Source: Oopsacas minuta
Taxonomy: Eukaryota > Animalia > Porifera
Assembly (NCBI GenBank): GCA_024704765.1
Contig: JAKMXF010000309.1
Span: 287,887 to 351,886 of the forward strand
Reading direction: 5' to 3'
DNA length: 64,000 nucleotides
The notes beneath the pieces were generated by a model, which searched no databases, was not told the DNA's origin, and worked only from the letters and a program-made list of their open reading frames with translations. This document shows positions 9,981-27,500 of this stretch, in pieces; position 1 is the first letter of the stretch, and each line of letters opens with the position of its first letter. Both the position numbers and the translations under genes were made by a program.

Positions 9981-10583
9981 TTATTTCGGGAAGCCCATAT
10001 ACGGCTGAGGTACACCCTGACAAACATCATAAGAAGGGGGATCAGTCTCCATGAGGTAATTGGGGTAGCAGATCGGATCTGGTTGTCCAGGGTAAGGCAC
10101 CGGTGACGCGTACGAGTATCCTAGCGTGTGGACCGGCTGGGACTGGGGGTAACCATATGATTGGCTGTCAGGGTTAATCATGGCCGGTATGTTCGTCGGC
10201 GTGTTTGGAATATTGATGGGTACATTCTGCCTCATGTCGCGTGTATTTTTAGCTTCCACACACATAAATACACATAATATGCAACCAATTACAATACAAG
10301 GCAAGCAAGATATGAGATAGCAAGCTGACATTGTTGCTATGTAGATAACTGGTGAGACGGTGACGACGTCAGGTACATTTGTACAGTTATCGTTATAGGT
10401 GTAGTAATAGTTAGCGTAATAGGTAAAGTAGTTGTAAAAGTAGGTATTGTAAGTGTGGTAGGAGTAACTACGTTCTAGTCTAGTCGGTGCGCCGTGATTC
10501 TTGACTTCTTCTCCAACACTTTTCTGATATTTTAAGGTTAATACGAAGATTATGAATGAGAGGGAAATCAACTTTAAATCCAT
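9981..10583 (-). CDS. Tyr-rich single-pass membrane protein, paralog A (CYYR1/Shisa-like topology)
   Basis: Signal peptide, RLER|S, Tyr-rich tract, Cys-rich TM (CYLISCLPC), Pro/Tyr/Gln tail with PPSY. First ATG is at 10583. Confidence 0.8.
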   Translation of the reverse strand: MDLKLISLSFIIFVLTLKYQKSVGEEVKNHGAPTRLERSYSYHTYNTYFYNYFTYYANYYYTYNDNCTNVPDVVTVSPVIYIATMSACYLISCLPCIVIGCILCVFMCVEAKNTRDMRQNVPINIPNTPTNIPAMINPDSQSYGYPQSQPVHTLGYSYASPVPYPGQPDPICYPNYLMETDPPSYDVCQGVPQPYMGFPK

Positions 10584-10848
10584 CTTCACATATAGAGCGG
10601 GATTCTACTATTTAAACTGAATGCAAACCTTCAAAAATAGCAAATTTAAGCGTCTCGCGTATGCAAACAAAATGAGAAAAGATAGAGAAATATAAATAGT
10701 AATAAATTCGAACAAAAAGTATAAGAAAAAAGTTAGATAGTGTTTAAGCATAAAGTGGTATAAAAAAGTTAGAAAGAGATATATGGAAATAAGTTTGTTA
10801 TAGAATCGTGTTAGGTTTGGAAGGCTGTATAGGTTTGTTACCCAGCAT

Positions 10849-11331
10849 CTACAAGTGGGGCTTCTCAATACTAGGATCTACAAGTGGGTAGTATCCATGA
10901 GTTTGCACTGGTTGCGGCTGTTGTGGGTAACCTTGGGGTTGTGGGGTATAACCTTGAGGTCGTGGGTAGCCATAAGGCTGAGGTGGAGGAGCAGCAGTTG
11001 CAGTAGCTACAGGCATTGAAGTAATTATATGACTAGGTGCATTACTTTTACTACGATTACTATTCACAGCAACGACGATAACACCAATAATCCCTGCTAT
11101 AATACAGGGGAAGCAAGTACAGCAAAAACAAGCTATACTGCAAACTATATACACCCATGCTCTAGCAAGGCTGTAGTTATAGTTATAGGAGTAGTAGTAG
11201 TAGTAGTAGTAAGTAGTGTCATAATAGTTGTAGTAACTGGCACGTGCTGATCTGTCAAGGTTTTCCTCCGTACTCACCTCACAGAGGATGGTCATGAGAA
11301 GTACGAGTAGTGTGATGAACTTCAGGTACAT
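10849..11331 (-). CDS. Tyr-rich single-pass membrane protein, paralog B
   Basis: MYLKFITLLV signal peptide, RSAR|A, YYNYYDTTYYYYYYYSYNYNY, Cys-rich TM (ACFCCTCFPC), PQGY repeats. Confidence 0.8.
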   Translation of the reverse strand: MYLKFITLLVLLMTILCEVSTEENLDRSARASYYNYYDTTYYYYYYYSYNYNYSLARAWVYIVCSIACFCCTCFPCIIAGIIGVIVVAVNSNRSKSNAPSHIITSMPVATATAAPPPQPYGYPRPQGYTPQPQGYPQQPQPVQTHGYYPLVDPSIEKPHL

Positions 11332-12188
11332 AGATGCTATATTAGGTTTTACAAAGCAGTTTGAAATACGAAACTGTTTAAAATTAATTTCCCTTGAAAA
11401 TACCAGTGATTTTGTAGTATGTATAGACGCAAAATCGTGTGACACACGACGAGATCGTGAGGTTGAGAGCCCTGATTATGGCGTTTAGACAGGGTACGTG
11501 AAATAAGTATATAAGGACTACACCTGACAGCTGTAACTTTAATAGCTAGCCAACTTTACCGTGACAATTTTTCGATATTTTGTATACAAATAACTTTAGA
11601 ATATTTCATAAATGAACTTTGAAATCAAAGAATCAACATTTTGCATTTTATAGCTTTAGCATATTTCCAACATATCAGGCTATTAGGCGATTCCTAGATC
11701 ACTTCTTCTCGACCTGAAAATATTTTCTAGATGTGGAATGTGTGATTCATCACATATTTATGAAACAAACTTGATGACAATAAAGCTTCAATGAAATTCC
11801 AGAATTGATTGAAACTTGGAGGACCCCCAGGGCTGATTTTTGGCACACAGAGTATTTGGGCCTGCCTCGGACAAGTTCGAGTCTTGGACGAAATTAAGAC
11901 AAAATTGTCGCCTTTTTGGATTTACGAAAAATCACATTATTAGCACCGCTCAGCCAATATACATTATAGAAGTTTGAAATTTTAATCACAGGAATTGGCC
12001 AAATGCAAACTCAAAATGGGATTAATACGTCATCATGACCATTCAAAAAATCCAAATTGTCCAAATTTCGAAAAATTCTAGAATTCTAAACACCATTAAA
12101 AAAGGCATATATTAAACTACACAAATATAAGTTATGAAAAAGTTAGAAATAGTGAATGGAAATAGCCCTGTAGTAAGTAGGTTGGAAT

Positions 12189-12700
12189 CTATACGGGGTT
12201 GTTAGTGGGACTGGTAGTGCCTTGAGTAACGGAATAAGAAGGAGGGCGAGCTTCAGCTGCAGTACCAGCATCATGGTCATCAGGTGGCTTTGCAATGCTA
12301 GATGGCCTAAGAGGGCGGGGTCCTTGTGTTTGCATTGGTTGAGGATATACACAAAGCTGTCGGTATCCAACATAATGTTGAGGAGTTATAGGGATAGTGG
12401 AGGTGGTAGGTCTGTTTGTATTATGTTTAGTGACTGCAACAATTGAAAAACAGATGGCAATACAGGCACCAATTCCAAGGATAATCAAAGGCATGCAGCA
12501 CATTAAACATCCTAGGAAAACCAATGCGTTTATCCATGCTGAATAATTGATATAACCGTTGTAGGAATAATTATTATAGTAATAGCGTATGGTTGTATTC
12601 TAGTATCATCTTCAACAAGGTCATTACCCATGCTTAGAACACATTGTGTAGAGATAAGGATTAGAAGGATGGCGAGTATTGAGGTACGCTTCAGCTCCAT
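12189..12700 (-). pseudogene. Tyr-rich membrane protein, paralog C, frameshifted
   Basis: The ATG at 12700 encodes a signal peptide but stops after 56 aa. The homologous YYYNNY-TM-PPSY part is in another frame (offset 176 nt), and no GT-AG intron can repair it. Confidence 0.65.
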
Positions 12701-12987
12701 GGTAAACTAGATATGGAATTTCAAGGTGTTACAATATTCAAATGTATCTCTTACTCATAAACATATTTTGTTCACAAAGATTGTGGTAATAATAATGTTG
12801 TATTCGAATTCATATACGAGAGATATTATAAAATTTAGTTTGAAATATCGCGAAAATGTTAGTGAAATGTGGTTACAAACATCACATAAACAAACATACA
12901 CTACATCAAAAGAAGTGATAAAATATCAATCAAAGTATTTGGGGACAGTAAAAATAAAGTGAAAATAAGAATAGTTGGGTATAACTC

Positions 12988-13509
12988 TTAAATCTGGAAG
13001 CCAATATGAGGTTTTTGAAGAGGGGGGCCTTGAATCGCAGGAAAAGAATGAGGACCAGCTTGCATATCACCATCATGGTAACCATTTGGCGCCTTAGTAA
13101 TGTTAGGTTGTGGAGGCGGGTTGTTATGGGTTTGAACTGGATGAGGGTTGGCATAAGGTGCATTAGTCATAGGGGCGGCGGCGACAACAGGCATTGGACC
13201 AGTCGTAGATATATGACTTGGTGCATCTAGTGTTCTAGCTGTGCCAATAGCAAAGCATAGAACGACACAGCTTATTATTCCAATTATAATACATAGTATG
13301 GCAGTTACGACCAAACAAAGTATAACAATTACTATAAATATTAATACTGTTCCAGTAGAGCTATAGGTAGAGTTATAGTAATTATAATAGTAGTAAGAGG
13401 ATGTTGTGTTAATTTCTAAATGGGATCGTTCTGGCCGAATTTTAGATTCCTCCGTTGCCATGGTTACGCCATATTGTGTACAGATAATGAATAGAAGAAT
13501 GGCGAGCAT
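12988..13509 (-). CDS. Tyr-rich single-pass membrane protein, paralog D
   Basis: Signal peptide MLAILLFIIC, RPER|S, SSYYYYNYYNS, long Cys-containing TM, Pro-rich tail ending KPHIGFQI. The 5' end aligns with paralog C at nucleotide level. Confidence 0.8.
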   Translation of the reverse strand: MLAILLFIICTQYGVTMATEESKIRPERSHLEINTTSSYYYYNYYNSTYSSTGTVLIFIVIVILCLVVTAILCIIIGIISCVVLCFAIGTARTLDAPSHISTTGPMPVVAAAPMTNAPYANPHPVQTHNNPPPQPNITKAPNGYHDGDMQAGPHSFPAIQGPPLQKPHIGFQI

Positions 13510-14093: not shown

Positions 14094-17000
14094 TTAACCT
14101 TGATAAATTTCAGGTATCTTCGAGTGAGATGTACTAGCATATTCCCCGAAGCATAATTGAGACTTCTTGATTCCAGTCTGTAATTTGTAGCTGTTTGCAC
14201 CGAGTGATTTTAAAGGCAAGTTTATTCTTGGTTGTTGTTCTCGGACTTCTAATAAGCTGACGTCATCAATTGTCTAAAATTAAGTACATTAAACTCCAGT
14301 TTTAACGAAGTGATTCTTTAAACACTATAGCTTGAAAGTATTTGATTTACTCCGCTCATAACATGAAACGGGTCTCAATTACTTCATAATAATGATAGTT
14401 TACTGTTTGAATGTTACATTGTGTGTATTCAATGTAAAACAACCAAAATCTTAAATTACAGCCTGTGCCGACGTAATTTTCACAAATTGGATATTGACAC
14501 TTCATCAAAAGGTGTGAAAATATGATTAATTAAGTGACTTTCAGGATACAAGAACAATAAAAATATTATTCGAATTTACCTTTAGATTGTGCATTTGTAC
14601 ATTCAATTTTCCATTCCAGCCGGTGTAAGAAGAAGGACAATTCTCTGTAGAATTACATTCGAGTGTAACAGATTGTCTCACATATTCACTGATACTTGTT
14701 AGAATGTTAAGATTAGCAGCTTCAAAACTCTCAAAGTACATAATGTCAGAAGTATCTCTTTGCTAGAAAGAAATAGTATATAATAACAGAATTTAGAAAT
14801 TGGAATTTGTACAATTTGGCTAAAATAGGTAAGAGTTGACTGGCCCCTTTAAAGATTATAATAAATATATTTATACTCACATTTTGTGCTTCAAAGCAAG
14901 TCCATGCGAGTGTATACTCGTCTCTATTAACTTTTATAAGCTCAGAATCACATGTACATGGTATAGAGTCAAATGGTGATCCGCCGTTAGGATCACAGAG
15001 GAATTGACCTTCTACTTCTTTACCATCGATATCTATAGAAAAAATCAATTGAATTTGTTACAAAATTAAACCAAAAGGTGTGAAAATATGATAATTATAT
15101 GATAAATCATGGAGATATAGATTTGATAATGTCAAAATTGGAATCTACATATTTGATTACCCCTGACTAACAGTGAAACTAAATTCCTAGAAACATTTTG
15201 AATATATGCAAAGACTTGTGAAAATATGATTAATCACCAAAAAATGTGAAAATTTCAAAATACACACTCGAGGTGCAAATCTCCGACCCAAAATATATAT
15301 GTGTACAAATGTTCATGTTAATCAGACGGCTAGAATTCGCACGGCGGACGTAAGCCACATATCTTCTATGCCATGAGGATATCTCCCTATAAGAGTTGTA
15401 TTAAAATAGATTTTCAATATAACTTACAGGAGAGAGGTAGATTTGACTTCTCAAAGCAGGACCTAATGATTGTAGTGTCTATTCCCGTCTGACTGGAGTA
15501 TTTATTTCCACCTCGATTGTTAGTAGCTGCAGATGGTCCTGGAGGGCCTGGGGGTCCTGGTTGTCCTCTCTCACCACGACCTCCTTGTTCCCCAGATATA
15601 CCAGGTGATCCACGCATTCCAGGATTACCCTAACGAATATTTTTAAAAGTAAAGAATCTCGTTCCTAAAAATACTTTTAGGTAACTTACAATTGGTCCAC
15701 TTAAACCATTCTCTCCGTTAGGGCCTGTTGATCCAGGTGGTCCCTGTATAAATATTAATAACAATTAATCAGCTATAAATTTAATAATATAATAAACAGT
15801 CAACTCCGGTTACATCGAAGTGATTTTGACGGTCACATAAGCTTCAATATAACGAGAGTTAATTGTAGAGTGCATACCTGTATTCCAGGAGCACCGGGTG
15901 GACCAGATCTTCCTGTGCTTCCGGTTGTTCCCTGGGCACCTTGCCTGCCATTGAAACCTGTTCTTCCAGGGTCACCCCTTTCACCATTTGTCCCTTCTTC
16001 TCCTTTAGATCCTTTCTCACCAGTATCACCATCTCTTCCCTATAGTATTGATAATAAGGATCAAGGAAAGACATCGATATATTGGGTTGGAAATATCGAA
16101 AATATTGAATTGGGAAATTTCCAAAAAATATAGTAAAAATCGGAAAATTAGCCAATATTTTCGATCGTAAAAACTTCAAAGTAATTCAAATTTCGAACTA
16201 CAGCGTAACCTCCACAAAAGGGGTCTGTGGAAACGGGAACTTCTGGAAACGAAAGAAAAATATATTGAGTGAATTCCTAGTCCCAAAAAATGAAACTCCA
16301 CAAACGGGGAAGCATTTTTCGGCGTCCCCATTTATGGAGGTAACACTATACTTAAATTACTCACTGTTGTTCCATCTAATCCAGAAATACCCTTGATTCC
16401 CTTTTCACCAGTTGGTCCGTCAGATCCTGAATCGCCATCAGGACCAGCATCTCCTTGTGGTCCAGGTGCCCCGGGTAGACCAGGGCTTCCTGTGCTGCCC
16501 TGAGTTCCACTGTCTCCTTGAGGTCCCTCTTGTCCCCCACGACCACTGTTTCCACTGTCACCTATTTCTCCTGTACGACCCTGAGAATTTTGTTAAGTAA
16601 TACACGATTGAATATCGTAAAAGTATCAGAATACGATTTTGTTTGTTTGTTTGTTGGATTATTTGTTGGATTATTGGTGTTAAACTTACAACTGGACCAA
16701 GTGCTCCTTTAGGTCCTGGAAGCCCGGAAATACCTTGAAGACCAATACCTCCTTGGGATCCACTTTGGCCATCTGATCCAACTGCTCCCCTTGGGCCTTG
16801 ACCACCTGGTGGTCCCTGAACGCCTGATGCCCCTGTGCCGCCAGTAAATCCAACAGGACCTGGGAGTCCAGTCCCACCACGACCTCCTGGTCTACCCCTC
16901 TCACCGGAAACTCCTTTTGAACCTTTCTCACCTTTGAACCCAACTGGTCCTGGATTACCCTAATAAACAAAAAGTAAAGCATTTTTGGAATTCGTATTTT

Positions 17001-20000
17001 TAACGGAAATTACATTTGTTCCATCCAGGCCATTATTTCCTGGAGGGCCGTCAATCCCATCAGAACCATCTCTACCATCTATTCCTTGGCCTCCTTCTCC
17101 TCCCTGTTCACCTTTAGCACCCTAACACAAATATTTCTGTGAAATTTCGCAATTTATAAATACAATAAACACTGAAATTTCGCAATTTATAAATACAATA
17201 AACACTGAATTTGCTAAAGTTAGTAAACAAATATTAAAGGTTTTGTTAAGTATAACATGCGTAGTAGAAAATGAAATTACCTGTGGTCCAGCAAGTCCGA
17301 ATGAACCAAGAGCTCCGGTTAACCCTTGACTACCTCGTGGCCCACCATTACCTTTAGCACCAGATGGACCAGGATCTCCATCTCTTCCAATAGAACCGAA
17401 GTCTCCTGCTGGACCAACTGGCCCATCTACTCCGAGTGATCCTTTCTCTCCGAAAGATCCCTTGGGGCCTGGGAATCCCCTTGGACCTCTAGGACCCTAG
17501 AATAACAAAAATTCGATAAATATTACATTGAATACCGTTTGGGTGGGGAGTTTCGATTGTTGAAAATATAAAAGATTTTGAAACATAAATATCTTAAATA
17601 TTACATATAGTGGTGTACGTTGATTGCCTTATCAAGAACTTATTGTCCTTTTGTATTGGAAATTATTCCTCTAATATAAAGTTATTAGCAAGGGAAATTC
17701 GTGAAAAGTTTCGTGCAAAAAATACAGGTTTTTCTACTACTCCCTTCATCTCCAGTTTTCTTTTTCAGGAAAATAACGGTATGTAATTTCAACTTACTTG
17801 TGGTCCCACTACTCCTTCTGGTCCTGGAGGACCTAATGGCCCTTGTGTACCAGGAGTACCTTGAGCACCTGTTAATCCTCTAGGCCCTGGAGTTCCTGTT
17901 TCTCCCTATAAAACAAAAAATTACATAAGATTCTAACTTTCGCAAATTCTTGAAAAATAAAAATAAAACTCACATCAGCACCAGGTGGCCCTGGGTCACC
18001 TCGAACACCCTGTGTACCATCCATACCAGATTCTCCTGGTCCTCCATTGTTTCCATCCGGACCTGGTTGTCCATTATCACCCTATGTTAATCACAAAATA
18101 AACATTATTCAGGAAATAACAATCTGTGCCAACAGCTTTGTGGTAGACTGCGTACAGCCAAAACTATTATAGATTAATGGCTGAAACTTTAGGCTACAAG
18201 GGCAATTACCGTCCGGTGTCCATTGATGGTCACGAGATATGACATGTTTTACCACTTTGAATTATCGTTTTCCAACATTAATTTTTAACTAATATATGCC
18301 ATAGAAATACAACTTACATCTTGTCCATTAGGGCCTGGGGGACCAGCGGGGCCGGTGTTTCCAATAAGACCAAGTTCTCCAGGTGTCCCGAGTGCACCAG
18401 GTTCTCCTTGACGACCGTTTTCACCCTAAGGAATGCATATGATTAAGTAATCAGAATCTTGTCAAGTATGTAAATGTGAGGCTTACGTTTTGACCGTTAG
18501 TTCCTCGCTCTCCTTTAGAGCCCTTTAAGCCTTTCCTTCCCTATAAATATTAGAAATTAAAATGACAACATTTTACTTACAAAAATATAAAACTAACTTT
18601 AGCTCCATCAAGACCAGGATCACCATTTGGTCCAGTGACACCATCTATACCTATACCTCCATCTTGACCAGGTTCTCCTCGTTGTCCCTGCAAAATACAG
18701 TTAAATTAGATTCTTACTGGAAATTAGTTTTCAATTTACCTTTACTCCTTTCCTGCCACGGTCCCCAAAAGCTCCTTGACCACCTTGGGGGCCAAGTGGA
18801 CCCCTTTCACCACGATCTCCACTGTATCCCTTTTGTCCATCACGGCCCTGAAATGATACAATCATTATAAAATACGACGTCATTAGGATAATTCATAAAT
18901 GAGAGGAAATAATCTTACCTGGAATCCGGGGTCTCCAGTTTCTCCAACACCTCCGTCTTGTCCACGGTCACCCTATATAAATATGATGCATAAAAAAGAA
19001 AAAAGTATATTAAACATGTTACTGACCTTTAATCCTTTGGAACCAGGAGAACCTCTGGATCCTTGTCTACCCTGATCACCGTCTGGACCAGGTTCTCCAC
19101 CAGAACCTGTTTGTCCAAATGTCCCAGGGAATCCCTATTGGAGGAGAATTAAGATTTAAAGCAGTTTTGAGCCGATTAAGTGTTTGTTAGATTCATTGAT
19201 AAGTTTGAATGTTTGTTTGTTTGTTTGTTTGTTTGTTCATTTGTTTACTTGCATGCATATTTATTCATTTATTTATTTGTTCGTAACAGAACTTACAGCT
19301 GTTCCCGGTCTTCCTACTACTCCATCTTCTCCATCAAATCCATCAACACCATCATTACCAGCAGTACCAGAGAATCCATCAGCACCAGTTAAACCTTGAC
19401 CTCCAGGGGGTCCAACTGATCCAATACCTCCTTTAAATCCCTATATTGAAAAGTGTTAAAATTCGCAAGTTTCGCAGTGTTAAGTTAGACAAACCTTTGA
19501 TCCAGGGCGTCCACGATTTCCTGCTTGACCTCTTGCACCCGAGCGACCTAGAAAACCTCTAGAAGCAGGATAACCGGAAGTACCAACTAGACCTTGTGAA
19601 CCCTACATAAATATAAATACAAATTTATAACAAATGATCTTCGAAAAATTTATTCGTTTATACACAAATCGTAATTTGAAATGATCGCAAAAATTCACCG
19701 TGATCTGATCGAAATCGCGATCAGTTTTCGCGATCGACTAATGCCCTGTAAATGAAGAATATAAAGTGTAACCTCCACAAATGAGGCTCGTCGAAACATG
19801 AAATTTTTGGAAACTGAGTGAAAATAAATAGAGCGAATTCCTACACTACACAAATTTTAAAAGTACATACCTGACTACCAACAGCTCCCTTCAGGCCTTT
19901 CTCTCCATCCTCACCTCTCTCACCATATCTACCATTACGTCCGTTAGTTCCAGTATTACCACGTACTCCTTTGGGACCTTGTGAGCCTTCAGGGCCCTCA

Positions 20001-21648
20001 GAACCTTTCCTACCTTTCAAACCCTGGTCACCACGATTTCCAGCATTCCCGTTTTGACCTGGAGGCCCGTTTGCACCTGCAGGGCCATCACCACCTTGTA
20101 ATCCTTGACCTCCTACTCTACCTGGTAACCCGGCGAATCCCTGATCTCCTTTCTGACCTTGTTGACCAGGATTACCCTAATTAAGCACGAATTAAATAAT
20201 TACAGAATTCAAGCATTTGAAAGAAGTTTCATATTAACAGTGTCCTATTACTTACAATTAATCCTTCTTGTCCAGATTGTCCACCACCTCCAGTAATACC
20301 AGGGGCTCCTGGTGGTCCTCTCGCACCTTTGATTCCAGGCTCACCGGTTGGCCCATTTGGTCCTTGATCAGCATTCAAACCTGGATTGCCAGCTGGTCCA
20401 GGTGGTCCAGGGTCTCCTTGTTCACCATTTTCACCTGGTTGTCCTCCGATACCCTTTTAAGACAAATGTAAATATGAAGTATTGATATCTACTTATAAGG
20501 TAATCTGGTAATGGATGCTTACCGGTGATCCTTGTAATCCATCGTCTCCTTGTTGTCCAAATGCACCTGCTGATCCCTATACAAATTCAATTTCAAATTT
20601 TTCATTCTAGAAATATCTTTACCAAACATTAATACTAGTTCTAGCACTAATAAAGAGTTGTCTACTTACAGGGAATCCATCTATTCCAGCTTCTCCTTTA
20701 GCTCCCTTAGAACCTTGGTCACCATTTGCTCCATCAAAAGCATTTGCACCATCACGACCGTTGTCACCTCTGTCTCCTTTCTGACCAGGCATTCCTACTG
20801 GACCTTCTTCACCTTGACGGCCCTGAAGAAAATGTTATGTAATAAAGGATTTGTTTATTTGTTTGTTTGTTTGTTTGTTGTTTGTCGATTCGTGTAGAAT
20901 TAGTTTGTTTGTGTGCTAGTTGTATATTTGTTTGTTTATCAGATACGTTATAACTCGTGTTACCTGAGATCCAGGAGATCCAGTCCTACCATCTTGACCA
21001 TTATCTCCATAGACTCCCTAAAAAGCCAACAAAACATAAAGTAATGCAAATCACAAAAATATCGTATTTTAACGAAAATACTCACATCTCTTCCTGGATT
21101 TCCTGGTTGTCCGATAGAACCTGTAAATCCTACTACACCCTATATATATATATATGAATAATTAATTACGAAATACAAAGAAATAAATTACGGTAGATTA
21201 TTGAACTTACTTTTCGGCCCTGCAACCCTACTGAACCAACCCGTCCTCTATCACCTTTATCTCCCTAAAGAAATGAAATGGAATTTCAATAAAATGTTAA
21301 TTAAGTTGTTCGGAATTATTCAGAAATTACAAAATATTGTTCTAACAAAAAATTGGATAAAATTTGCACAAATACTTACAGTTGGGCCTGGATCTCCTTG
21401 GGGACCATCTGGACAGTCTGCACAATCACCACCTCCTGATTGCTAAGAAAAATAACAGAATTTTTAGATTATTTTAAAATCAGAGAATAAATTGTTACTT
21501 ACGCCTGAGATTGGTCCTTTCTAGAGAGAATAAAATACGTAAATATTCGTAACATTAGATAAGCAATCTATGAAATGTAACTTACATTATTTTGAGCGAA
21601 AGCCAAGAATAACAATGATGAAAATAATAATATTAATACAAGCTTCAT
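14094..21648 (-). CDS. Fibrillar collagen alpha chain A: ~30 exons, ~335 Gly-X-Y triplets, divergent COLFI-like C-propeptide, ~1250 aa
   Basis: Signal peptide [11 protein letters not shown]; 18-nt micro-exon at 21520-21503. Helical exons of 54/108/162/216/270/306 nt are all phase 0. C-terminal exons contain [39 protein letters not shown] and QLCF. Confidence 0.9.
15130..15405. repeat. Dispersed repeat shared with ~47475-47704 and, inverted and partial, ~33090-33300
   Basis: Collinear blocks attacccctgac, gcaaatctcc.accc, gctag.attcgcac and gg.atctcccta. Confidence 0.65.
15797..15865. mobile_element. MITE family A, short copy in a collagen A intron
   Basis: Both TIRs are present around a 20-nt core. 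Confidence 0.75.
16201..16348. mobile_element. MITE family C (TIR CAGTGTAACCTCCACAAA, TA flanks)
   Basis: TIR pair. Related copies at ~4289, ~19766, ~34424-34560, 37265, ~38703, ~51478 and 56180. Confidence 0.8.
17141..17206. repeat. 33-bp exact tandem duplication in a collagen A intron
   Basis: gaaatttcgcaatttataaatacaataaacact x2. Confidence 0.9.
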
Positions 21649-22435
21649 GTTGCTAGAAAATAATAAAATAACAAATAAATATAATTCTCAAAACGACGAT
21701 TTCAATTTCTCCTTTTACGGTGGACACGAATATTATAATCTCGAGAAAATAGTGTTTCGAAAATATGAGGAAAAATACGAATTTCACTGCAGCTTTTCAT
21801 ATGACAAACTATTAGCGAAATAAACATGTGAATAATATCATAAAGAAACTCACCTTGTGTATTTGTTTAAGTGAAAATACTATCTATATTTTTCTAATAC
21901 CGAAGGTCGGTTCTCATAATATAGACCAGAAAACCGAAAATCGAAGTGTTGATCTTGATAACACTCCAATGCAAAAGAATTGACAAATTTGTATTTACGA
22001 AGGACAACGAATACTCTCCCAAGAACAGAAATGAAGTTGGCTGTAGTACTTCTTCACAATGCAAATGATTTCGCCAGACAACTGGTATTAGCTATATACT
22101 TGAATTGAATTGCCATAGACAGTGCATGCTCTATAACAGTAAAATACCATTATACACTACAATGCTAATATTAACTAACTCAAACTGAGTCTAATATTGT
22201 ATTTAGAATAAAGCTTGTATTACTTTCAATGTGTAATACATAGTAGTAGCGGACAATTGGTATGCATAGAGATTGTATTATAATGTTGTAGTATTTGGAA
22301 ATTTGAGCATATTGAGTTGACTGTTTAGTTTATTCTATAAGGATTAGTATATCGAATCTATGAACATAGTTTGGAGACGATAAATGAATAGAAATTACGT
22401 TAAATAAGGAAATGATCACACAATAAATCGTGATA

Positions 22436-22578
22436 CAGTCAACCCCCCCGTTATATCGAAGCCCAAGGGACCGTGATAATTACTTCGATATATGTGGAGT
22501 TCAATATAATCCAGGAGTTTACCCAGGTACTTGGAGAACTCGATATACTGCGGATATTCGATATACGGGAGTTACCTG
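22436..22578. mobile_element. MITE family A
   Basis: TIRs with TA flanks on both sides. Confidence 0.85.
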
Positions 22579-22767
22579 TAATTATAAATATATACAAATA
22601 CATTAATATTAACTTACAATAATTCGAGGTGAATTCACTTTCCAGAAGCAGCCTATAAAATAAACAAATTTCAATAATATTATTGCAATGAATTGCTAAA
22701 CAACAAGTATGGGGTAAAGGGATTCGTGTAAGGTAGAGGCTCGAATAGATCAAAAGTAATAGTGTTA

Positions 22768-22834
22768 CAGTCAACTTCTGTACATCGAAGTAATTATCAC
22801 GGTCCCTTGAGCTTCGATGTACAGGAGTTGACTG
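22768..22834. mobile_element. MITE family A, short copy
   Basis: cagtcaacttctgtacatcgaag ... cttcgatgtacaggagttgactg, a near-perfect inverted repeat. Confidence 0.85.
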
Positions 22835-22914
22835 ACTAAAAATATCAATTGAAAACGTATCAAAATCAGATATAACACATAATAAGGCAACAAATGAATG
22901 GTTTAAGACAATAC

Positions 22915-23865
22915 TCAAAGTTTTTTTAAGTTTTGAAAATCCTCTTTGCTTAAGTTTAATAAATCTAATAACTTCTGTGGATCTTCTCCAGTTGCCATGT
23001 CCATAAAATCTTTGGGCACTTTCCCTGCTAAATGTTTTGCATTCGGGTATATACCCTGTACTTCTTTCTTGCGAATTTTCACACCTTCCCATGGTCCGTT
23101 CAGTTCTTCCCAGGTGAATAATAGTGCGTCAGTTAGCTCGTTAAACGGTGAGAAATCGACCAAAATGACACTCATAATATCTGATTGTACGTAGCAGTCA
23201 AAGACACAGTTTGGGAGTAATATTTTCTTCTTCACTTCTGTAGCGAAAAATTTTGAAATTAGTTCCAAAACTTCCATTTCTATGTCAGATAGAAATGCGT
23301 AGTAATCTGAATGATTTCGTTGTGAAATGGCGATAAGATTCGAGTTTTTAACGAAACAACGGAATTCCAAAGATGTATCAATTTCTCGCCATTCTCTGAG
23401 CACCAAATAATGATCGAAGAGTTCCGCATTTTCTGCAACACTTAAAATGATATTTTCGCTTAAATCAAATGTTGAAATCGTATCAGATGACTTCAATAAA
23501 TCATAAATTTCATCGAACTTTTTGCATTTCAAAGAATTTCCAATTTTAATCCACGCGGCATCGCATGGAGCGCTCCAGTTCAATTTCGGAAATACGGACC
23601 CGCCCAATAACTTGACACATTTTGCGATCTCCACTTCCAAACTAGGAAAAGACGGTTCAATAATTTCATCTCCATAAGAAATATCTTCGTCAGAATCTTG
23701 GCTAGATTTCCCTGCGATGTACTCAATAAATTCTTTAGAGAGTTTAATAATCAAACTCGGAATTGTTAACTTTGCAAAAACAGGATACCAAACGTTGAAT
23801 TGAGCACAAAATAAGGACTTTGATAGATCTTCATTTTCTGGATTATTATCAGAATATTCTGCCAT
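22915..23865 (-). CDS. CDC123: Cell division cycle 123 (D123 family ATP-grasp protein), intronless
   Basis: GGSVFPKLNWSAPCDAAW, LLKSSD, YLVLREW, EFRCFV, ISQR and LLFTWEEL. Confidence 0.95.
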   Translation of the reverse strand: MAEYSDNNPENEDLSKSLFCAQFNVWYPVFAKLTIPSLIIKLSKEFIEYIAGKSSQDSDEDISYGDEIIEPSFPSLEVEIAKCVKLLGGSVFPKLNWSAPCDAAWIKIGNSLKCKKFDEIYDLLKSSDTISTFDLSENIILSVAENAELFDHYLVLREWREIDTSLEFRCFVKNSNLIAISQRNHSDYYAFLSDIEMEVLELISKFFATEVKKKILLPNCVFDCYVQSDIMSVILVDFSPFNELTDALLFTWEELNGPWEGVKIRKKEVQGIYPNAKHLAGKVPKDFMDMATGEDPQKLLDLLNLSKEDFQNLKKL

Positions 23866-23959
23866 TATATATCGCTTTATATATTCTGTGGATTAGAAAA
23901 TGTCAAGATTTTAAAGATTCGACAGCATAGCGGGCCTTTGAGCTGTGATATAACTGAAT

Positions 23960-24228
23960 CATATCCAGTTATATCGAAGCTCAAAGGAGCGTGATAATTA
24001 CTTTGATATAAGAGGAGTTCTATATAACCCCGATTAAATATATGTCACTTTGACAAATTGTGACCATATTTGTACAATTTTACAACTCAATATAAGCGAG
24101 TATTTTGATATACAGTGAAACTTCGTTAATACGAACACCAACGGACGGGCAAAAATTGTTCGCTTTATCCAGAGTTCGTATTAAGAAGGTTCCACTGTAA
24201 TGGCGTTCGATATGACTGGAGTTTACTG
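23960..24228. mobile_element. MITE family A interrupted by a nested MITE at 24113-24197
   Basis: The inner element TA|cagtgaaacttcgttaatacgaac...gttcgtattaagaaggttccactg|TA splits the outer copy. Confidence 0.75.
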
Positions 24229-24525
24229 TTTATTTATGTTCCCCCCCCTCTCCTCCCCTCTATTCTATTACCCTCTTGCACAAGTTGAACATTTTTTTTC
24301 ATAATATTTACATCTGATACAAACAAACAAAAATGAAGCTACACAATTGTATAATAAGAAACAGTGAATAATATAATAATACACAAATAATCAAGTATGT
24401 AAAGTCTTAGAAAATACAAACACGATTGTTTACAGTTGGTAAAACATAAACAAACACTAAAATTACTGTTGAACACCAAAAGTCCATTAATTAAAAGGTA
24501 AATAATTAATTTTGGACAAATTTGG

Positions 24526-27500
24526 TTATTTTTGAGTCGTTCTAATACCGAAACACACTTCACTATTCGTGTTAAGCTTATGAGAACTTGGAAATGTAGC
24601 GATTGGAAGCTTATTCTGAAGATATTTTGGTTTTAGAAGTATTTCCTGGTTACTTGACTAGAGGGAAAATGGAGAAAATAAACTTAAAAAATTCAAAAAA
24701 ATTATGAGTAAAATTTGGAAACTGTTACTAACCTCCATGTCAAATTTACATTCCGAAACCTCAACTTGGTAACCAGGTAAATCGATCCTTTCAAGTCCGC
24801 ATGGGACTGTAATCTTCATGATATCTGATAGTAGTCCAAGATATCGCAACTGAGTTGATACAGCCGGGTTGTATTGAATCACTCCATTATCCTAAACGAA
24901 AATAAGGGTAAATTTGCTGGCTCAAAATCGCGAAATATAACACGACATACCAATCCAGTAATAGTTCCGTTCATGCATGAGAAGACAATTGAAGTCTGTG
25001 TGTCAATTTCCAAACTTTCGCAACCACAGGGCAAAGTATCGTAAGAAGAACCATCATTAGGATTACAATATGCAAACTTCTTGTCTGAAAATTTATTACC
25101 GACCATAAGCTCATCTTGATACCAATCTGCGCAACTCCTATAAATAGCAGAAAAAGTTTATTGTATAATTTACAAATTTAATTATTAATGTCTTACCTAA
25201 CAACGGGTAGACCGTTGTGGAATTCCATATGAGAGCTTGAGTATTTTCCACCACTACCACTTGATGCAGTACCAGGGGGACCTATTGAAATTAGTAATAA
25301 ATTGTGTACATTTCATAACAACTATATTATGTGAAAGGAATTTACCAGGAGGTCCTGGGGGTCCTTGTGATCCTGGAGGTCCATCACGTCCGTTAGAACA
25401 TGACGGTCCTGGTTGTCCAACGGGTCCTGGAGGACCTGGGGGTCCATTTTCACCATCGCGTCCAGGGAGACCAGTAGTTCCTGAAGGGCCCGATGGTCCA
25501 GAAGGTCCGGATGCTCCCGTATTTCCGGTATCACCTTGCAATCCGACTGCACCTGGATTTCCAGAATTACCAATGAACCCTTTGTCACCTTGATTACCCT
25601 TTGAACCCTTGTCTCCACGAGCACCATTTGCGCCCTTTGAACCAGTTAAGCCAGGAGATCCATCACGACCTAACAACGAGAAATATGTAGAGAATGTAAT
25701 ACAAATTTAACCAATTTTCTAAACTGAACTTACCTGCAGAACCTTGGGGTCCATCAGAACCAGCTCTTCCATCACTACCTGGGTTACCAGAGGCTCCAGG
25801 GGCACCATTCACACCAGTGGGTCCTGTAGGACCGGGGGGTCCAGGGGGTCCAGTTACACCTCTTTCACCAGTTATACCAGGAGTACCATCAACACCATTG
25901 AGACCTCTCTCACCCTGTAATCCAGTTAAACCAGAATCTCCAGAGGGACCTTGTTGTCCGGGGGGGCCTGGTGGTCCAGTTGCGCCACGAGTTCCTTCAG
26001 ATCCACGTGGGCCAGTGGGTCCATCTGGTCCTTGAGGTCCAATAGGTCCTGGGGGTCCAGGAGGGCCAGTACCACCGGGTGCTCCCTGTGAAAAAGAATA
26101 AATTATATCTGAAAATTAGTATTTTCATTTGCATGTTTGTTTTTTGTTACTTACAGCTGTTCCTTGTGGTCCAGTTGCTCCTGTAGTTCCAGTGAGACCG
26201 GGAGGACCGTCATCACCTTGACCACCATCTGAACCGGTAGCACCTGGATCTCCTCTATTTCCGTCGAGACCATCAGTACCTGCTGAACCAGGGGGTCCGG
26301 GGTTTCCATTTTGTCCGGGGGTGCCGTCACGACCTGGTACTCCTGTGTCTCCTGTGTCTCCTGATGGTCCTCTTGGTCCTTCAGTACCTGGTGGTCCTGG
26401 TGGGCCGCCTGGACCTGGTGCACCCTAAATATAGAAATTAATAATAAATAAGTAAAACTTTTGAAAAATAATTCATTGCAAAATCCCTGTATTTCACGTT
26501 ACAGGAAAATATCCAGAAATATAAAAAAAATTGTGAATTGGGATATAACTTACAGTTGGTCCAGTATCTCCAGAATTTCCTTGTTCCCCTGGACCTCCTG
26601 GGGGTCCTGAATCTCCAGTACTACCCTTCTCACCCTTCTCACCATCACCACCACCAGATCCTAAAGAACCGCTATCTCCAGATTGTCCGGGTGGTCCAAT
26701 ATCTCCTCGTTCTCCGACAGGTCCTACAGGTCCCTGTGGTCCAGGGGGTCCGGGGTTACCTGGTTGACCTTGATCTCCTTGTGGTCCATTTGGTCCAACT
26801 GGACCCTGTGGCCCTTGTGATCCCTATAATAAGTCAAAATATAAAACTGATACACAAATCAGACTAAAGAAATTTCTTAAGTTTTCACGGGTTAAATCAA
26901 ATACAGTCAACTCCCGTTATGTCAAGTGTGAAATTGTACAAATATGGTCCTAAACTGTCAAAGTACATATATATATATATATATCATCGGTCATTATTGG
27001 GTTCCCTTGAGCTTCGATATAACGGGAGCTAACTGTAATTATGTTTTGTAAATATTAACACACAAATTGTAAAAGATAGACAAATCAAAACTTACAGCTT
27101 GTCCGTTGCCTCCAGATGGTCCATCTTGTCCGGGGGGTCCGGTACCACCTGGCGATCCAACATCTCCTCGACTACCTGGGGTACCTGGTGCGCCATTTGA
27201 TCCGGGGTTACCTGATGAACCTGTTATACCAGTTGGTCCTGGGGCTCCATTGGGACCTTGTTCTCCTCTTATTCCAGGTGCACCAGTATCACCAATTAGT
27301 CCATCAAGTCCTGGAACACCATCAAGTCCAGGAGCTCCTACTTCTCCATCCGCTCCAGGATCACCTCCCTGGCCTGATTGACCTGCATCTCCTGGGAGTC
27401 CACGCCCACCTTGGGCTCCTTGGGGACCATCATTTCCGGGAATTCCATTAGGACCCTATTTTGTAATACAAAGTAAATTATGAAATACAAAAGTTTTTTT

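What the first reader, a model, noticed from the sequence alone, without database searches (positions are those of the whole stretch)
9981..13509. Tandem family of Tyr-rich, RXXR-processed single-pass membrane proteins
Four intronless paralogs share one plan: signal peptide, short pro-segment, then an RXXR site (RLER|S, RSAR|A, RPER|S). This is followed by a tiny ectodomain that is largely Tyr/Asn/Ser/Thr (e.g. YYNYYDTTYYYYYYYSYNYNY) with N-glycosylation sequons, a Cys-rich TM (CCxPC-like), and a Pro/Gln/Tyr tail with PPSY in A and C. The topology recalls CYYR1/VOPP1/WBP1/Shisa-like NEDD4 adaptors, but the six-Cys ectodomain is replaced by a poly-Tyr tract exposed after predicted convertase cleavage. 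Inference: a lineage-specific surface family, for example for phenolic cross-linking, adhesion or matrix/mineral templating. It lies directly beside two collagen genes.
Basis: partly seen in the sequence, partly recalled or inferred. Interest (0 to 1): 0.75.

Follow-up and report, generated by a model that had tools for sequence, protein, structure and literature searches.

The report
Sponge Tyr-rich CYYR1-like membrane adaptors
Four tandem genes (one broken) in a glass-sponge genome encode small single-pass membrane proteins with a tyrosine-rich outer stub and a PPxY tail; they look like fast-evolving distant relatives of the CYYR1/Shisa-like adaptors that recruit NEDD4-type ubiquitin ligases, not a sponge-only skeleton protein.

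Summary
Four collinear minus-strand single-exon genes lie at 9981-13509. A, B and D are intact; C is split by a frameshift.

All share the same plan: signal peptide, short acidic pro-segment, RxxR, Tyr/Asn/Ser-rich stub, one long Cys-rich helix, and a Pro/Gln/Tyr tail.

The genome matches the published Oopsacas minuta assembly. It holds two more copies on another contig. Syntenic arrays occur in at least three other assemblies, which I infer to be sponges. Amino-acid changes are fewer than synonymous changes, so these are genes under selection.

The family is not lineage-specific. An exhaustive profile search reaches mollusc proteins that pass Pfam's CYYR1 threshold, and nematode proteins with the same RxxR-Gln/Tyr/CxxPC layout. 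These scores lie far above region-shuffled decoys. The sponge proteins themselves fail the CYYR1 threshold and lack the six-Cys ectodomain.

Best reading (about 0.55): divergent CYYR1/Shisa-like type I adaptors, trimmed by a furin-type convertase, whose PPxY tail recruits WW-HECT ligases. Convertase, a WW-plus-HECT locus and a tyrosine sulfotransferase are all encoded in the genome.

Collagen adjacency is conserved synteny at one of the two loci only, so it is weak evidence for a matrix role. Verdict: a new variant of a known kind, of moderate interest.

The parts
9981..10583 (-). Gene A, intact, 200 aa. Signal peptide about aa 1-24 (10512-10583). RLER at 10470-10481. Tyr-rich stub at 10386-10469. 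Long helix aa 78-119 (10227-10352) containing CLPC (10296-10307). PVHT motif at 10125-10136. PPSY at 10029-10040. C-terminal GFPK at 9984-9995.
   Evidence: The AlphaFold2 model has one helix at 78-119 with pLDDT 86-92 and the rest disordered. The exact protein is in NCBI/UniRef. Its positional orthologue is L001:11606-12202.
10849..11331 (-). Gene B, intact, 160 aa. RSAR at 11242-11253. Tyr-rich stub at 11170-11241, which includes a TAC-type triplet repeat. Hydrophobic Cys-rich span within 11050-11169, with CFPC at 11104-11115. PVQT at 10900-10911. The tail is truncated, with no PPxY and no GF end.
   Evidence: The exact sequence is not in the public protein collection. It scores 121 bits against the family HMM.
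12189..12700 (-). Gene C, broken. The signal-peptide piece 12533-12700 is in one frame and runs to a stop codon at 12530-12532. The Tyr stub, helix and tail (12192-12599) are in another frame. The frames switch near 12597-12603, with TAG at 12600-12602 in the downstream frame. CCMPL lies at about 12486-12500. PMQT at 12327-12338. PPSY at 12234-12245. It is either a pseudogene or an assembly indel.
   Evidence: (search reports '1 TAG' inside the match). The public model is a 101-aa fragment.
12988..13509 (-). Gene D, intact, 173 aa. The signal peptide is shortened, because the ancestral start appears lost and an internal Met is used. RPER at 13426-13437. Tyr/Asn/Ser stub at 13354-13425 with NTT and NST sequons. 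Hydrophobic span within 13222-13374. PVQT at 13129-13140. PHSF stands in place of PPxY. C-terminal GFQI at 12991-13002.
   Evidence: It scores 170 bits against the family HMM. The exact sequence is not in the public protein collection.
14094..30463 (-). Two neighbouring collagen genes. This is context only and not part of the family. G-X-Y exon runs lie at 15878-20822 and 25401-29591, and a C-propeptide-like ORF lies at 14746-15048.
   Evidence: The same neighbourhood is seen in L001 and L012, but not at the second family locus on C210 or its counterpart L014.

Best explanation
These are real, rapidly evolving genes for small type I membrane proteins. They are a glass-sponge branch of the CYYR1/Shisa-like (STMC6) kind of single-pass PPxY adaptors.

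Proposed mechanism:
1. The signal peptide inserts the protein with its N-terminus in the lumen.
2. A furin-type proprotein convertase probably cuts after the conserved R-x-x-R and removes a 10-16 residue acidic pro-segment. In most family members this would expose Gln at the new N-terminus.
3. What remains is a 20-60 residue disordered, Tyr-rich stub sitting on one long Cys-rich helix.
4. The cytosolic tail carries conserved linear motifs: YPQPVQT, D-x-x-PPxY and a terminal IGFQ.
5. The PPxY recruits WW-domain HECT ligases of the NEDD4 family to endosomal or plasma membranes, as shown experimentally for human CYYR1.
6. Each protein has only one PPxY. Clustering through the Tyr stub or the Cys-rich helix may supply multivalency.

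Status of each step:
- Shown here: gene reality, architecture, conservation, the statistical link to CYYR1-like proteins, and presence of the partner enzymes in the genome.
- Inferred: cleavage, topology in vivo, WW binding and clustering.
For: Architecture and conserved columns:
- R35 is invariant; R38, the helix Pro and tail Pro/Tyr positions are at least 90% conserved across 23-24 sequences.
- AlphaFold2 gives one long helix at 78-119 with pLDDT 86-92 and the remainder disordered.

Gene reality:
- Two more copies lie in the same genome.
- Six tandem copies lie in the syntenic contig L001, and further arrays in L012 and L014.
- Between species pN is 0.25-0.41 against a saturated pS of about 0.79. 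Paralogue dN/dS is 0.28-0.45.

Link to CYYR1-like proteins:
- The exhaustive profile search gave 45 hits. P0022 (E 3.5e-8) and P0023 (E 1.5e-7) are among them.
[quoted passage not shown] Six other distant hits (P0023, P0042, P0039, P0028, P0038, P0029) give sub-threshold PF10873 matches of 13.9-27.2 bits.
- The alignment is collinear from the Arg/Tyr region to PPxY..GF.
- Region-preserving shuffles score 3.9 +/- 7.2 bits (maximum 27.9) against 50.0 bits for the real P0022.
- Reciprocal HMMs built from the mollusc and nematode sets score sponge proteins about 20 bits above decoys.
- hhalign gives 98.5% against the mollusc set, over the PPxY..GF tail. It gives 97.3% against the nematode set, over RxxRQ, the Tyr region and the CxxPC helix.
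- The nearest language-model clusters are CYYR1-like, shisa-5-like, CYYR1, WBP1-like and VOPP1.

Partner enzymes in the genome:
- A proprotein convertase P-domain gene (77.8 bits).
- WW domains and a HECT domain within the same ~4-kb stretch of the minus strand (G000:C88:649952-654110), taken to be one NEDD4-type gene.

Known function of the kind:
- CYYR1 PPxY motifs bind the WW domains of WWP1/WWP2, and CYYR1 also binds ITCH, at late endosomes (PMC11399591).
- CYYR1 has Cys inside its TM segment and belongs to STMC6 (PMC5578492).
Against: - No sponge member reaches Pfam's CYYR1 threshold. The best is 11-13 bits, E 0.17-0.5. A six-frame genome search with PF10873 found nothing.
- The six-Cys ectodomain that defines STMC6 is absent.
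- Every link runs through low-complexity and transmembrane sequence. Region-shuffled decoys can reach about 28-34 bits, so convergence of a simple architecture is not excluded.
- hhalign aligns only sub-regions, not the full length.
- Only 3 of the 6 O. minuta copies keep a canonical PPxY: A, C and E. Human CYYR1 needs at least two PPxY motifs to bind WWP1.
- Most sites are minimal R-x-x-R without a basic P2 residue. In molluscs the Arg residues follow the signal peptide directly, so the Arg pattern might be functional rather than a cleavage site.
- No expression, cleavage or binding data were available.
Confidence: 0.55

Rival explanations
1. The family would be a lineage-specific surface family whose exposed poly-Tyr stub works outside the cell, in phenolic (dityrosine or DOPA) cross-linking, adhesion, or templating of collagen matrix or silica. 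It would be co-located with collagen genes for that reason.
For: - The Tyr-rich stub is predicted to be extracellular or luminal.
- The array sits next to fibrillar-type collagen genes in the window, in L001 and in L012.
- The stub evolves fast, as many matrix proteins do. The A orthologue pair is 37% identical while neighbouring housekeeping genes are 80-81% identical.
Against: - The second locus (C210) and its counterpart L014 have no collagen nearby.
- The same plan occurs in non-siliceous animals: bivalves, a chiton and nematodes.
- Tract length ranges from nearly none to about 55 residues.
- The protein stays membrane-anchored, and its conserved motifs are mostly cytosolic.
- The known hexactinellid silica proteins hexaxilin, perisilin and glassin are secreted proteins of different composition (perisilin and glassin are His-rich), with no match to this family's plan.
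Confidence: 0.12
2. The stub is the functional end. The pro-segment plus RxxR would act as a maturation module, and the Tyr tract would be post-translationally modified, most plausibly O-sulfated by the sponge TPST. The result would be a strongly anionic juxtamembrane patch that binds a luminal or extracellular partner, and the PPxY tail would then route that partner for degradation. This elaborates the best explanation and does not exclude it.
For: - The genome encodes a clear tyrosylprotein sulfotransferase (E 3e-70 to human TPST1/2 structures).
- Several copies have Asp interleaved with Tyr, as in known sulfation sites: copy F, the A orthologue in L001, and copy E.
- The R-x-x-R followed by Gln is conserved from sponges to nematodes, directly ahead of the Tyr region.
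- The transmembrane Gla (PRRG) proteins have an analogous layout: propeptide, proteolytic removal of the propeptide, modified small ectodomain, TM segment and PPxY.
Against: - The window copies A, B and D have few or no acidic residues in the tract.
- The pro-segment is poorly conserved between paralogue groups.
- No modification data exist.
- The Pfam scans of the sponge proteins returned no significant family, so neither a Gla domain nor any other known modification domain was detected.
Confidence: 0.15
3. The resemblance to CYYR1-like proteins is convergent. Any short secretory protein with a low-complexity aromatic stub, a Cys-rich helix and a PPxY motif would score similarly. On this view the sponge family is an orphan of independent origin whose function cannot be inferred from CYYR1.
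For: - Sponge members fail the PF10873 threshold.
- Region-shuffled decoys reach up to about 28-34 bits.
- hhalign matches cover only sub-regions.
- One weak hit is an amoebozoan protein.
Against: - Real scores exceed the decoy maxima by more than 15-20 bits in both directions.
- Positional motifs are shared, not only composition: PPxY followed 6-10 residues later by a terminal GF, and RxxR-Gln followed by the Tyr region and a CxxPC helix.
- A language-model search, a method different from profile HMMs, ranks the same families first.
Confidence: 0.15
4. The ORFs are spurious or decaying. They would be chance ORFs over Tyr-codon microsatellites, or a dying gene cluster.
For: - C is frameshifted.
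- B contains a triplet repeat.
- B and D are absent from the public protein collection.
- No canonical poly(A) signal lies within 400 nt downstream of A, B or D.
Against: - Twelve or more copies in several genomes keep the same ordered motifs and open frames.
- Non-synonymous divergence is well below synonymous divergence.
- A, E and F are annotated gene models.
Confidence: 0.03

Closest known systems
[quoted passage not shown]
   Same: - Both have a signal peptide, a short ectodomain rich in Tyr, one long hydrophobic helix containing Cys, a Thr/Ser-rich juxtamembrane stretch and a Pro-rich tail with PPxY.
- Mollusc CYYR1-like proteins also have Arg/poly-Tyr stubs and a PPxY followed by a terminal GF motif.
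- Those mollusc proteins are retrieved by the sponge profile at E 1e-7 to 1e-8.
   Different: - Sponge proteins do not reach the PF10873 threshold.
- Their ectodomain has no six-Cys pattern.
- They have one PPxY or none, where human CYYR1 has three.
- They carry a conserved pro-segment with R-x-x-R ahead of the Tyr tract.
- They have their own tail motifs (YPQPVQT and IGFQ).
Shisa-like / STMC6 superfamily (Shisa, WBP1, VOPP1, WBP1L, TMEM92, nematode CX-module proteins)
   Same: - They are single-pass adaptors with a Pro-rich cytosolic tail and PY motifs.
- Several are shown to bring NEDD4-family ligases to membranes.
- These families are the nearest language-model neighbours.
- A nematode protein labelled 'CX domain-containing' shares the RxxR-Gln, Tyr region and CxxPC helix.
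   Different: The defining six conserved ectodomain cysteines are missing. Cys residues lie inside the helix instead.
PRRG1-4, the transmembrane Gla proteins (analogy only)
   Same: The layout is the same: a propeptide removed by proteolysis (furin/PACE-type processing is documented for vitamin K-dependent precursors), a small post-translationally modified ectodomain, one TM segment, and a PPxY/LPxY tail binding WW proteins.
   Different: There is no Gla domain and no detectable sequence similarity. Modification of the Tyr stub is hypothetical.
Commissureless / NDFIP / yeast Rcr1-type PY-motif trafficking adaptors (analogy only)
   Same: They are short membrane proteins whose PY motifs engage NEDD4/Rsp5 ligases to sort cargo to endosomes and lysosomes.
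   Different: Topology and ectodomains differ, and no homology is shown.

Membership tests
CYYR1 (Pfam PF10873) | Score at or above the curated gathering threshold (31 bits) on the family HMM | tested here: not met
   The best sponge members score 11-13 bits, E 0.17-0.5. A six-frame genome search with PF10873 found nothing.
CYYR1 (Pfam PF10873) | Transitive profile link to proteins that do pass the threshold | tested here: met
   The sponge profile finds P0022 at E 3.5e-8 among 1.84 billion proteins, and P0022 scores 35.4 bits on PF10873. The real score is 50 bits against a region-shuffled maximum of 27.9. The reciprocal HMM scores about 20 bits above decoys.
CYYR1 (Pfam PF10873) | Signal peptide, single TM segment, Cys residues within the TM segment | tested here: met
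   Hydropathy and motif scan. The AlphaFold2 model has a single helix at 78-119. The feature as described for CYYR1 comes from PMC5578492.
CYYR1 (Pfam PF10873) | Cys-rich ectodomain | tested here: not met
   There are 0-1 Cys between RxxR and the helix in the window copies. The stub is Tyr/Asn/Ser/Thr/Asp.
CYYR1 (Pfam PF10873) | Several PPxY motifs that bind the WW domains of NEDD4-family ligases | tested here: inconclusive
   A, C and E each have one canonical PPxY, as do most copies in other species. B, D and F have none. Binding is not testable here. Human CYYR1 needs at least two motifs.
Shisa-like / STMC6 superfamily | Six conserved cysteines in the N-terminal extracellular domain | tested here: not met
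   There are no conserved ectodomain Cys columns in A4 or A7.
Shisa-like / STMC6 superfamily | Single TM segment followed by a Pro-rich tail with PY motifs | tested here: met
Proprotein-convertase (furin-type) substrates | R-x-x-R (optimally R-x-K/R-R) in a luminal, accessible segment | tested here: met
   Both Arg columns are at least 90% conserved, and R35 is invariant in A7. The segment is predicted disordered. Nematode relatives carry R-x-K-R.
Proprotein-convertase (furin-type) substrates | Actual cleavage; processing enzyme present in the organism | not testable with these tools
   Only the presence of the enzyme could be checked. A P_proprotein domain scores 77.8 bits in a 949-aa open frame at G000:C297.
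Tyrosine O-sulfation substrates (TPST) | Tyr flanked by acidic residues in a secretory-pathway segment; TPST present | tested here: inconclusive
   A TPST orthologue is present (E 3e-70). Asp-Tyr alternation is strong in copy F and in the A orthologue in L001, but weak in window copies A, B and D.
Transmembrane Gla proteins (PRRG) | Gla domain after the propeptide | tested here: not met
   The Pfam scans of the sponge proteins returned no significant family and no Gla-domain match.

The most novel reading that the evidence does not exclude
The conserved acidic pro-segment plus R-x-x-R(Gln) ahead of the poly-Tyr stub is shared by sponges and nematodes. It would be an ancient maturation module analogous to the carboxylase-docking propeptide of the transmembrane Gla (PRRG) proteins. 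On this reading it directs dense modification of the Tyr tract, either sulfation by TPST or oxidation, before a convertase removes it. That would define a 'modified-tyrosine' class of PPxY membrane adaptors dating from before the sponge-bilaterian split.
Probability: 0.1. Interest if true: 0.75.

Novelty: new variant of a known kind. Interest (0 to 1): 0.4.

Why it matters
CYYR1 was first described as vertebrate-specific, and it gained a function only in 2024, as a PPxY adaptor that sends WWP1 to lysosomes.

A sponge branch, together with the mollusc and nematode relatives found here, would place this kind of adaptor at the base of animals. It would also show that the ancestral ectodomain may have been a Tyr-rich stub behind a convertase site, and not a six-Cys domain.

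The work adds gene models as well. Copies B and D are not in the public protein set under the boundaries tried here. Copy C can be flagged as broken.

Finally, it removes a tempting but weak link between these genes and collagen or silica skeleton formation.

Tried and rejected
- Direct Pfam scans of all sponge members gave nothing significant.
- A PF10873 six-frame search of the genome was blank.
- The word-indexed protein search with B alone gave one hit, with the 10-sequence alignment three hits (two of them the window's own proteins), and with P0022 two hits (itself and one mollusc relative). No vertebrate CYYR1 set could therefore be assembled for a direct profile-profile test.
- Known hexactinellid silica proteins (hexaxilin, perisilin, glassin) were considered and rejected. 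They are secreted proteins of different composition (perisilin and glassin are His-rich), with no match to this plan.
- Poly(A) and TATA motif scans were uninformative.
- A literature search for the ENA sample identifiers of the related contig found nothing, so the other assemblies are called sponges only from synteny and 80-81% identity of neighbouring genes.
- A helical hairpin reading of the 33-37 residue hydrophobic span was considered. AlphaFold2 gives one continuous helix, and the span is too short for two passes.
- Opposite-strand ORFs, such as the Val-rich ones at 11029-11250, are mirror images of the Tyr codons and were dismissed.
- No spliced model was needed, because the genes are single-exon. 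No toxin or virus sequence was involved.


Full report
**What is there**

The ORF list and the sequence show four collinear ORFs on the minus strand:
- A: 9981-10583, 200 aa.
- B: 10849-11331, 160 aa.
- C: 12189-12700.
- D: 12988-13509, 173 aa.

They are 26-33% identical to each other and share one plan:
- a hydrophobic N-terminus typical of a signal peptide;
- a short polar or acidic segment;
- R-x-x-R (RLER, RSAR, RPER);
- a stub in which Tyr makes up 29-58% of residues, with Asn, Ser, Thr and Asp;
- a 32-37 residue hydrophobic stretch rich in Cys with a central C-x-P-C;
- a Thr-rich juxtamembrane stretch;
- a Pro/Gln/Tyr tail with a P-V-Q-T motif, PPSY (in A and C) and a terminal GF-x(-x) (in A and D).

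C is interrupted. Its signal-peptide piece and its Tyr/helix/tail piece are in different frames. Stops in the downstream frame lie just before residue Asn-Thr-Thr. The public annotation holds only a 101-aa fragment that starts inside the helix.

D appears to have lost the ancestral start codon and to begin at an internal Met. Part of B's Tyr run is a triplet repeat. An HMM scan of the whole window found no further copy.

**Organism and context**

- The assembly has 61,460,524 bases in 365 contigs.
- This agrees with the published Oopsacas minuta (Hexactinellida) genome: 365 scaffolds, about 61 Mb, 36% G+C (PMC10280926; window composition).
- On one side of the array lie an SH2 tyrosine phosphatase, a CS-domain protein and a cyclophilin.
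- On the other side lie two collagen genes.

**Are they genes?**

Yes, on four grounds:
- The same genome has two more copies on contig C210: E (221 aa) and F (199 aa).
- An ENA metagenome scaffold (L001) carries six tandem copies in the same order: collagen, family array, phosphatase, CS-domain protein, cyclophilin.
- Two other assemblies carry syntenic arrays or the counterpart of E (L012, L014).
- A fourth assembly has more distant copies (L013).

Neighbouring housekeeping proteins are 80-81% identical between the window and L001. The positional orthologue of A is only 37% identical, so the family evolves fast.

Selection is nonetheless visible:
- Synonymous sites are saturated between species (pS about 0.79), while pN is 0.25-0.41.
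- Within-genome paralogues give dN/dS of 0.28-0.45.
- In a 24-sequence alignment the first Arg of R-x-x-R is invariant.
- The second Arg, the helix Pro and tail Pro/Tyr positions are at least 90% conserved.
- The consensus also has Gln after the second Arg, YPQPVQT, D-x-x-PPxY and a terminal IGFQ.

AlphaFold2 on that alignment gives an N-terminal helix at 3-21 and one continuous helix at 78-119 (pLDDT 86-92). Everything else is disordered.

**What is it related to?**

Pfam gives nothing significant for any sponge member. CYYR1 (PF10873) appears only at E 0.17-0.5.

Word-indexed searches found only the close sponge relatives. Because the claim of lineage specificity rests on absence of relatives, I ran the exhaustive profile search. 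It returned 45 proteins at E of 1e-3 or better, and 19 at 1e-10 or better.

The strong hits are sponge-type copies from ENA assemblies with long contigs. Below them come two further groups:
- Mollusc proteins. [quoted passage not shown] It passes the PF10873 threshold at 35.4 bits against a cut-off of 31. P0023, P0042, P0039, P0028, P0038 and P0029 give sub-threshold CYYR1 matches.
- Nematode proteins from Panagrellus and Acrobeloides. They share R-x-K-R-Gln, a Tyr-rich stretch and an L-C-x-P-C helix.

The sponge-to-mussel alignment is collinear from the Arg/Tyr region through the helix to PPxY and a terminal GF.

Such sequences are low-complexity, so I compared real scores with decoys shuffled separately within the signal, stub, helix and tail regions:
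- P0022 scores 50.0 bits, against 3.9 +/- 7.2 for decoys (maximum 27.9).
- Similar margins hold for P0023, P0025 and P0027.
- Reciprocal HMMs from the mollusc and nematode sets score sponge proteins about 20 bits above their decoys.

Decoys can reach about 28-34 bits, so hits near 36-40 bits are not trustworthy on their own.

Other methods agree in part:
- hhalign gives 98.5% against the mollusc set, but only over the PPxY..GF tail.
- hhalign gives 97.3% against the nematode set, over the RxxR, Tyr and helix region.
- The language-model atlas ranks a mollusc CYYR1-like cluster first (0.90). Shisa-5-like, CYYR1, WBP1-like and VOPP1 follow. This counts as a lead, not proof.

Together these results support remote homology with the CYYR1/Shisa-like (STMC6) kind. 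They do not establish membership of Pfam CYYR1, whose threshold and six-Cys ectodomain are not met.

**How it probably works**

Human CYYR1 is a signal-peptide, Cys-rich, single-pass protein. Its PPxY motifs bind the WW domains of WWP1 and WWP2, and it also binds ITCH; it acts at late endosomes and drives WWP1 to lysosomes. It is assigned to STMC6 with WBP1, VOPP1, WBP1L and TMEM92 (PMC11399591). Cys residues within its TM segment are noted in PMC5578492.

By homology and by motif, the sponge proteins are most likely PPxY adaptors of the same kind. The genome encodes the presumed partners:
- a proprotein convertase;
- WW domains and a HECT domain within the same ~4-kb stretch of the minus strand on contig C88, taken to be one NEDD4-type gene.

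The near-invariant R-x-x-R lies in a disordered luminal segment. It sits at a fixed position ahead of the Tyr tract and becomes R-x-K-R in nematodes. This is best explained as a convertase site, though cleavage is inferred and not shown.

Each protein has one PPxY at most, whereas CYYR1 needs two. I therefore infer that self-association through the Tyr stub or the Cys-rich helix supplies multivalency. This step is speculative.

**The Tyr stub**

Its length varies from almost nothing (P0007, P0020) to about 55 residues (copy F). It expands partly by triplet slippage, and it is not folded in the model. N-glycosylation sequons are present in the window copies but are not conserved elsewhere.

The genome has a clear tyrosylprotein sulfotransferase, and several copies interleave Asp with Tyr. 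Sulfation is therefore plausible for some members, but less so for A, B and D.

The layout resembles the transmembrane Gla proteins: propeptide, proteolytic removal of the propeptide, small modified ectodomain, TM segment and PPxY tail. That resemblance suggests the more novel reading given in the section on the most novel reading.

**Collagen and skeleton**

Collagen adjacency holds in the window, L001 and L012. It does not hold at the C210 locus or its counterpart L014. The known hexactinellid silica proteins are secreted and differ in composition (perisilin and glassin are His-rich), with no match to this plan. Relatives with the same plan live in animals without silica. I therefore give the matrix or mineral reading low weight.

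**Verdict**

'Lineage-specific' and the matrix role do not. This is a fast-evolving sponge variant of a known kind of PPxY membrane adaptor. It has a conserved pro-site and Tyr-stub module that has not been studied in any animal.

Noticed in passing
G000:C210:486805-488603 (L006:1363-2025 - and L006:2703-3299 -): Two further family members, E (221 aa, PPTY, terminal GFQS) and F (199 aa), lie on another contig. F has a 55-residue Asp/Tyr alternating tract and no PPxY. No collagen lies nearby. The counterpart of E in another assembly (L014:10001-10759) is 60% identical.
   Followed up: yes
L010:7952-8569 + (G000:C210, about 1.2 kb from copy E, convergent); counterpart L014:11338-11820 -: A small 'headless' membrane protein with no signal peptide and no Tyr tract. 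It begins almost directly with a Cys-rich helix (CGCLPL..), followed by the same MPGC-type juxtamembrane motif as copy E and a PPPPY tail. It is conserved in a second species and hits the family HMM only weakly (E 4e-5). It may be a truncated relative of the family.
   Followed up: partly
L017:1225-2280 + (G000:C318:265341-266396): A clear tyrosylprotein sulfotransferase orthologue of 352 aa, with E 3e-70 to the human TPST1/TPST2 structures.
   Followed up: partly
G000:C88:649952-654110 -: WW-domain matches (653247-654110) lie upstream of HECT-domain matches (649952-651691) on the same strand. The arrangement looks like a NEDD4-family ligase gene, and the HECT part shows several stops or introns in the six-frame matches.
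   Followed up: no
window 10849-11331 and 12988-13509: The exact proteins of copies B and D are not in the 15-billion-protein public collection, whereas A and a fragment of C are. B and D are probably unannotated in the public gene set, or are modelled with other boundaries.
   Followed up: partly
L001 (ENA ERZ23489137, scaffold_214), L012 (ERZ25072730), L014 (ERZ25072740), L013 (ERZ20067936): Contigs deposited as metagenome assemblies look like animal (inferred sponge) host DNA. L001, L012 and L014 are syntenic with the O. minuta loci, and L001's neighbouring genes are 80-81% identical to the window's; L013 shows no synteny but carries more distant family copies among eukaryote-type genes. 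Prokaryotic gene callers recovered the single-exon family members there.
   Followed up: partly
window 14746-15048 - and L001:6535-6798 +: A short Cys-containing ORF sits at the end of the neighbouring collagen gene and is conserved between the two species. It looks like a shrunken fibrillar-collagen C-propeptide, which agrees with the other first-stage note on this window.
   Followed up: no
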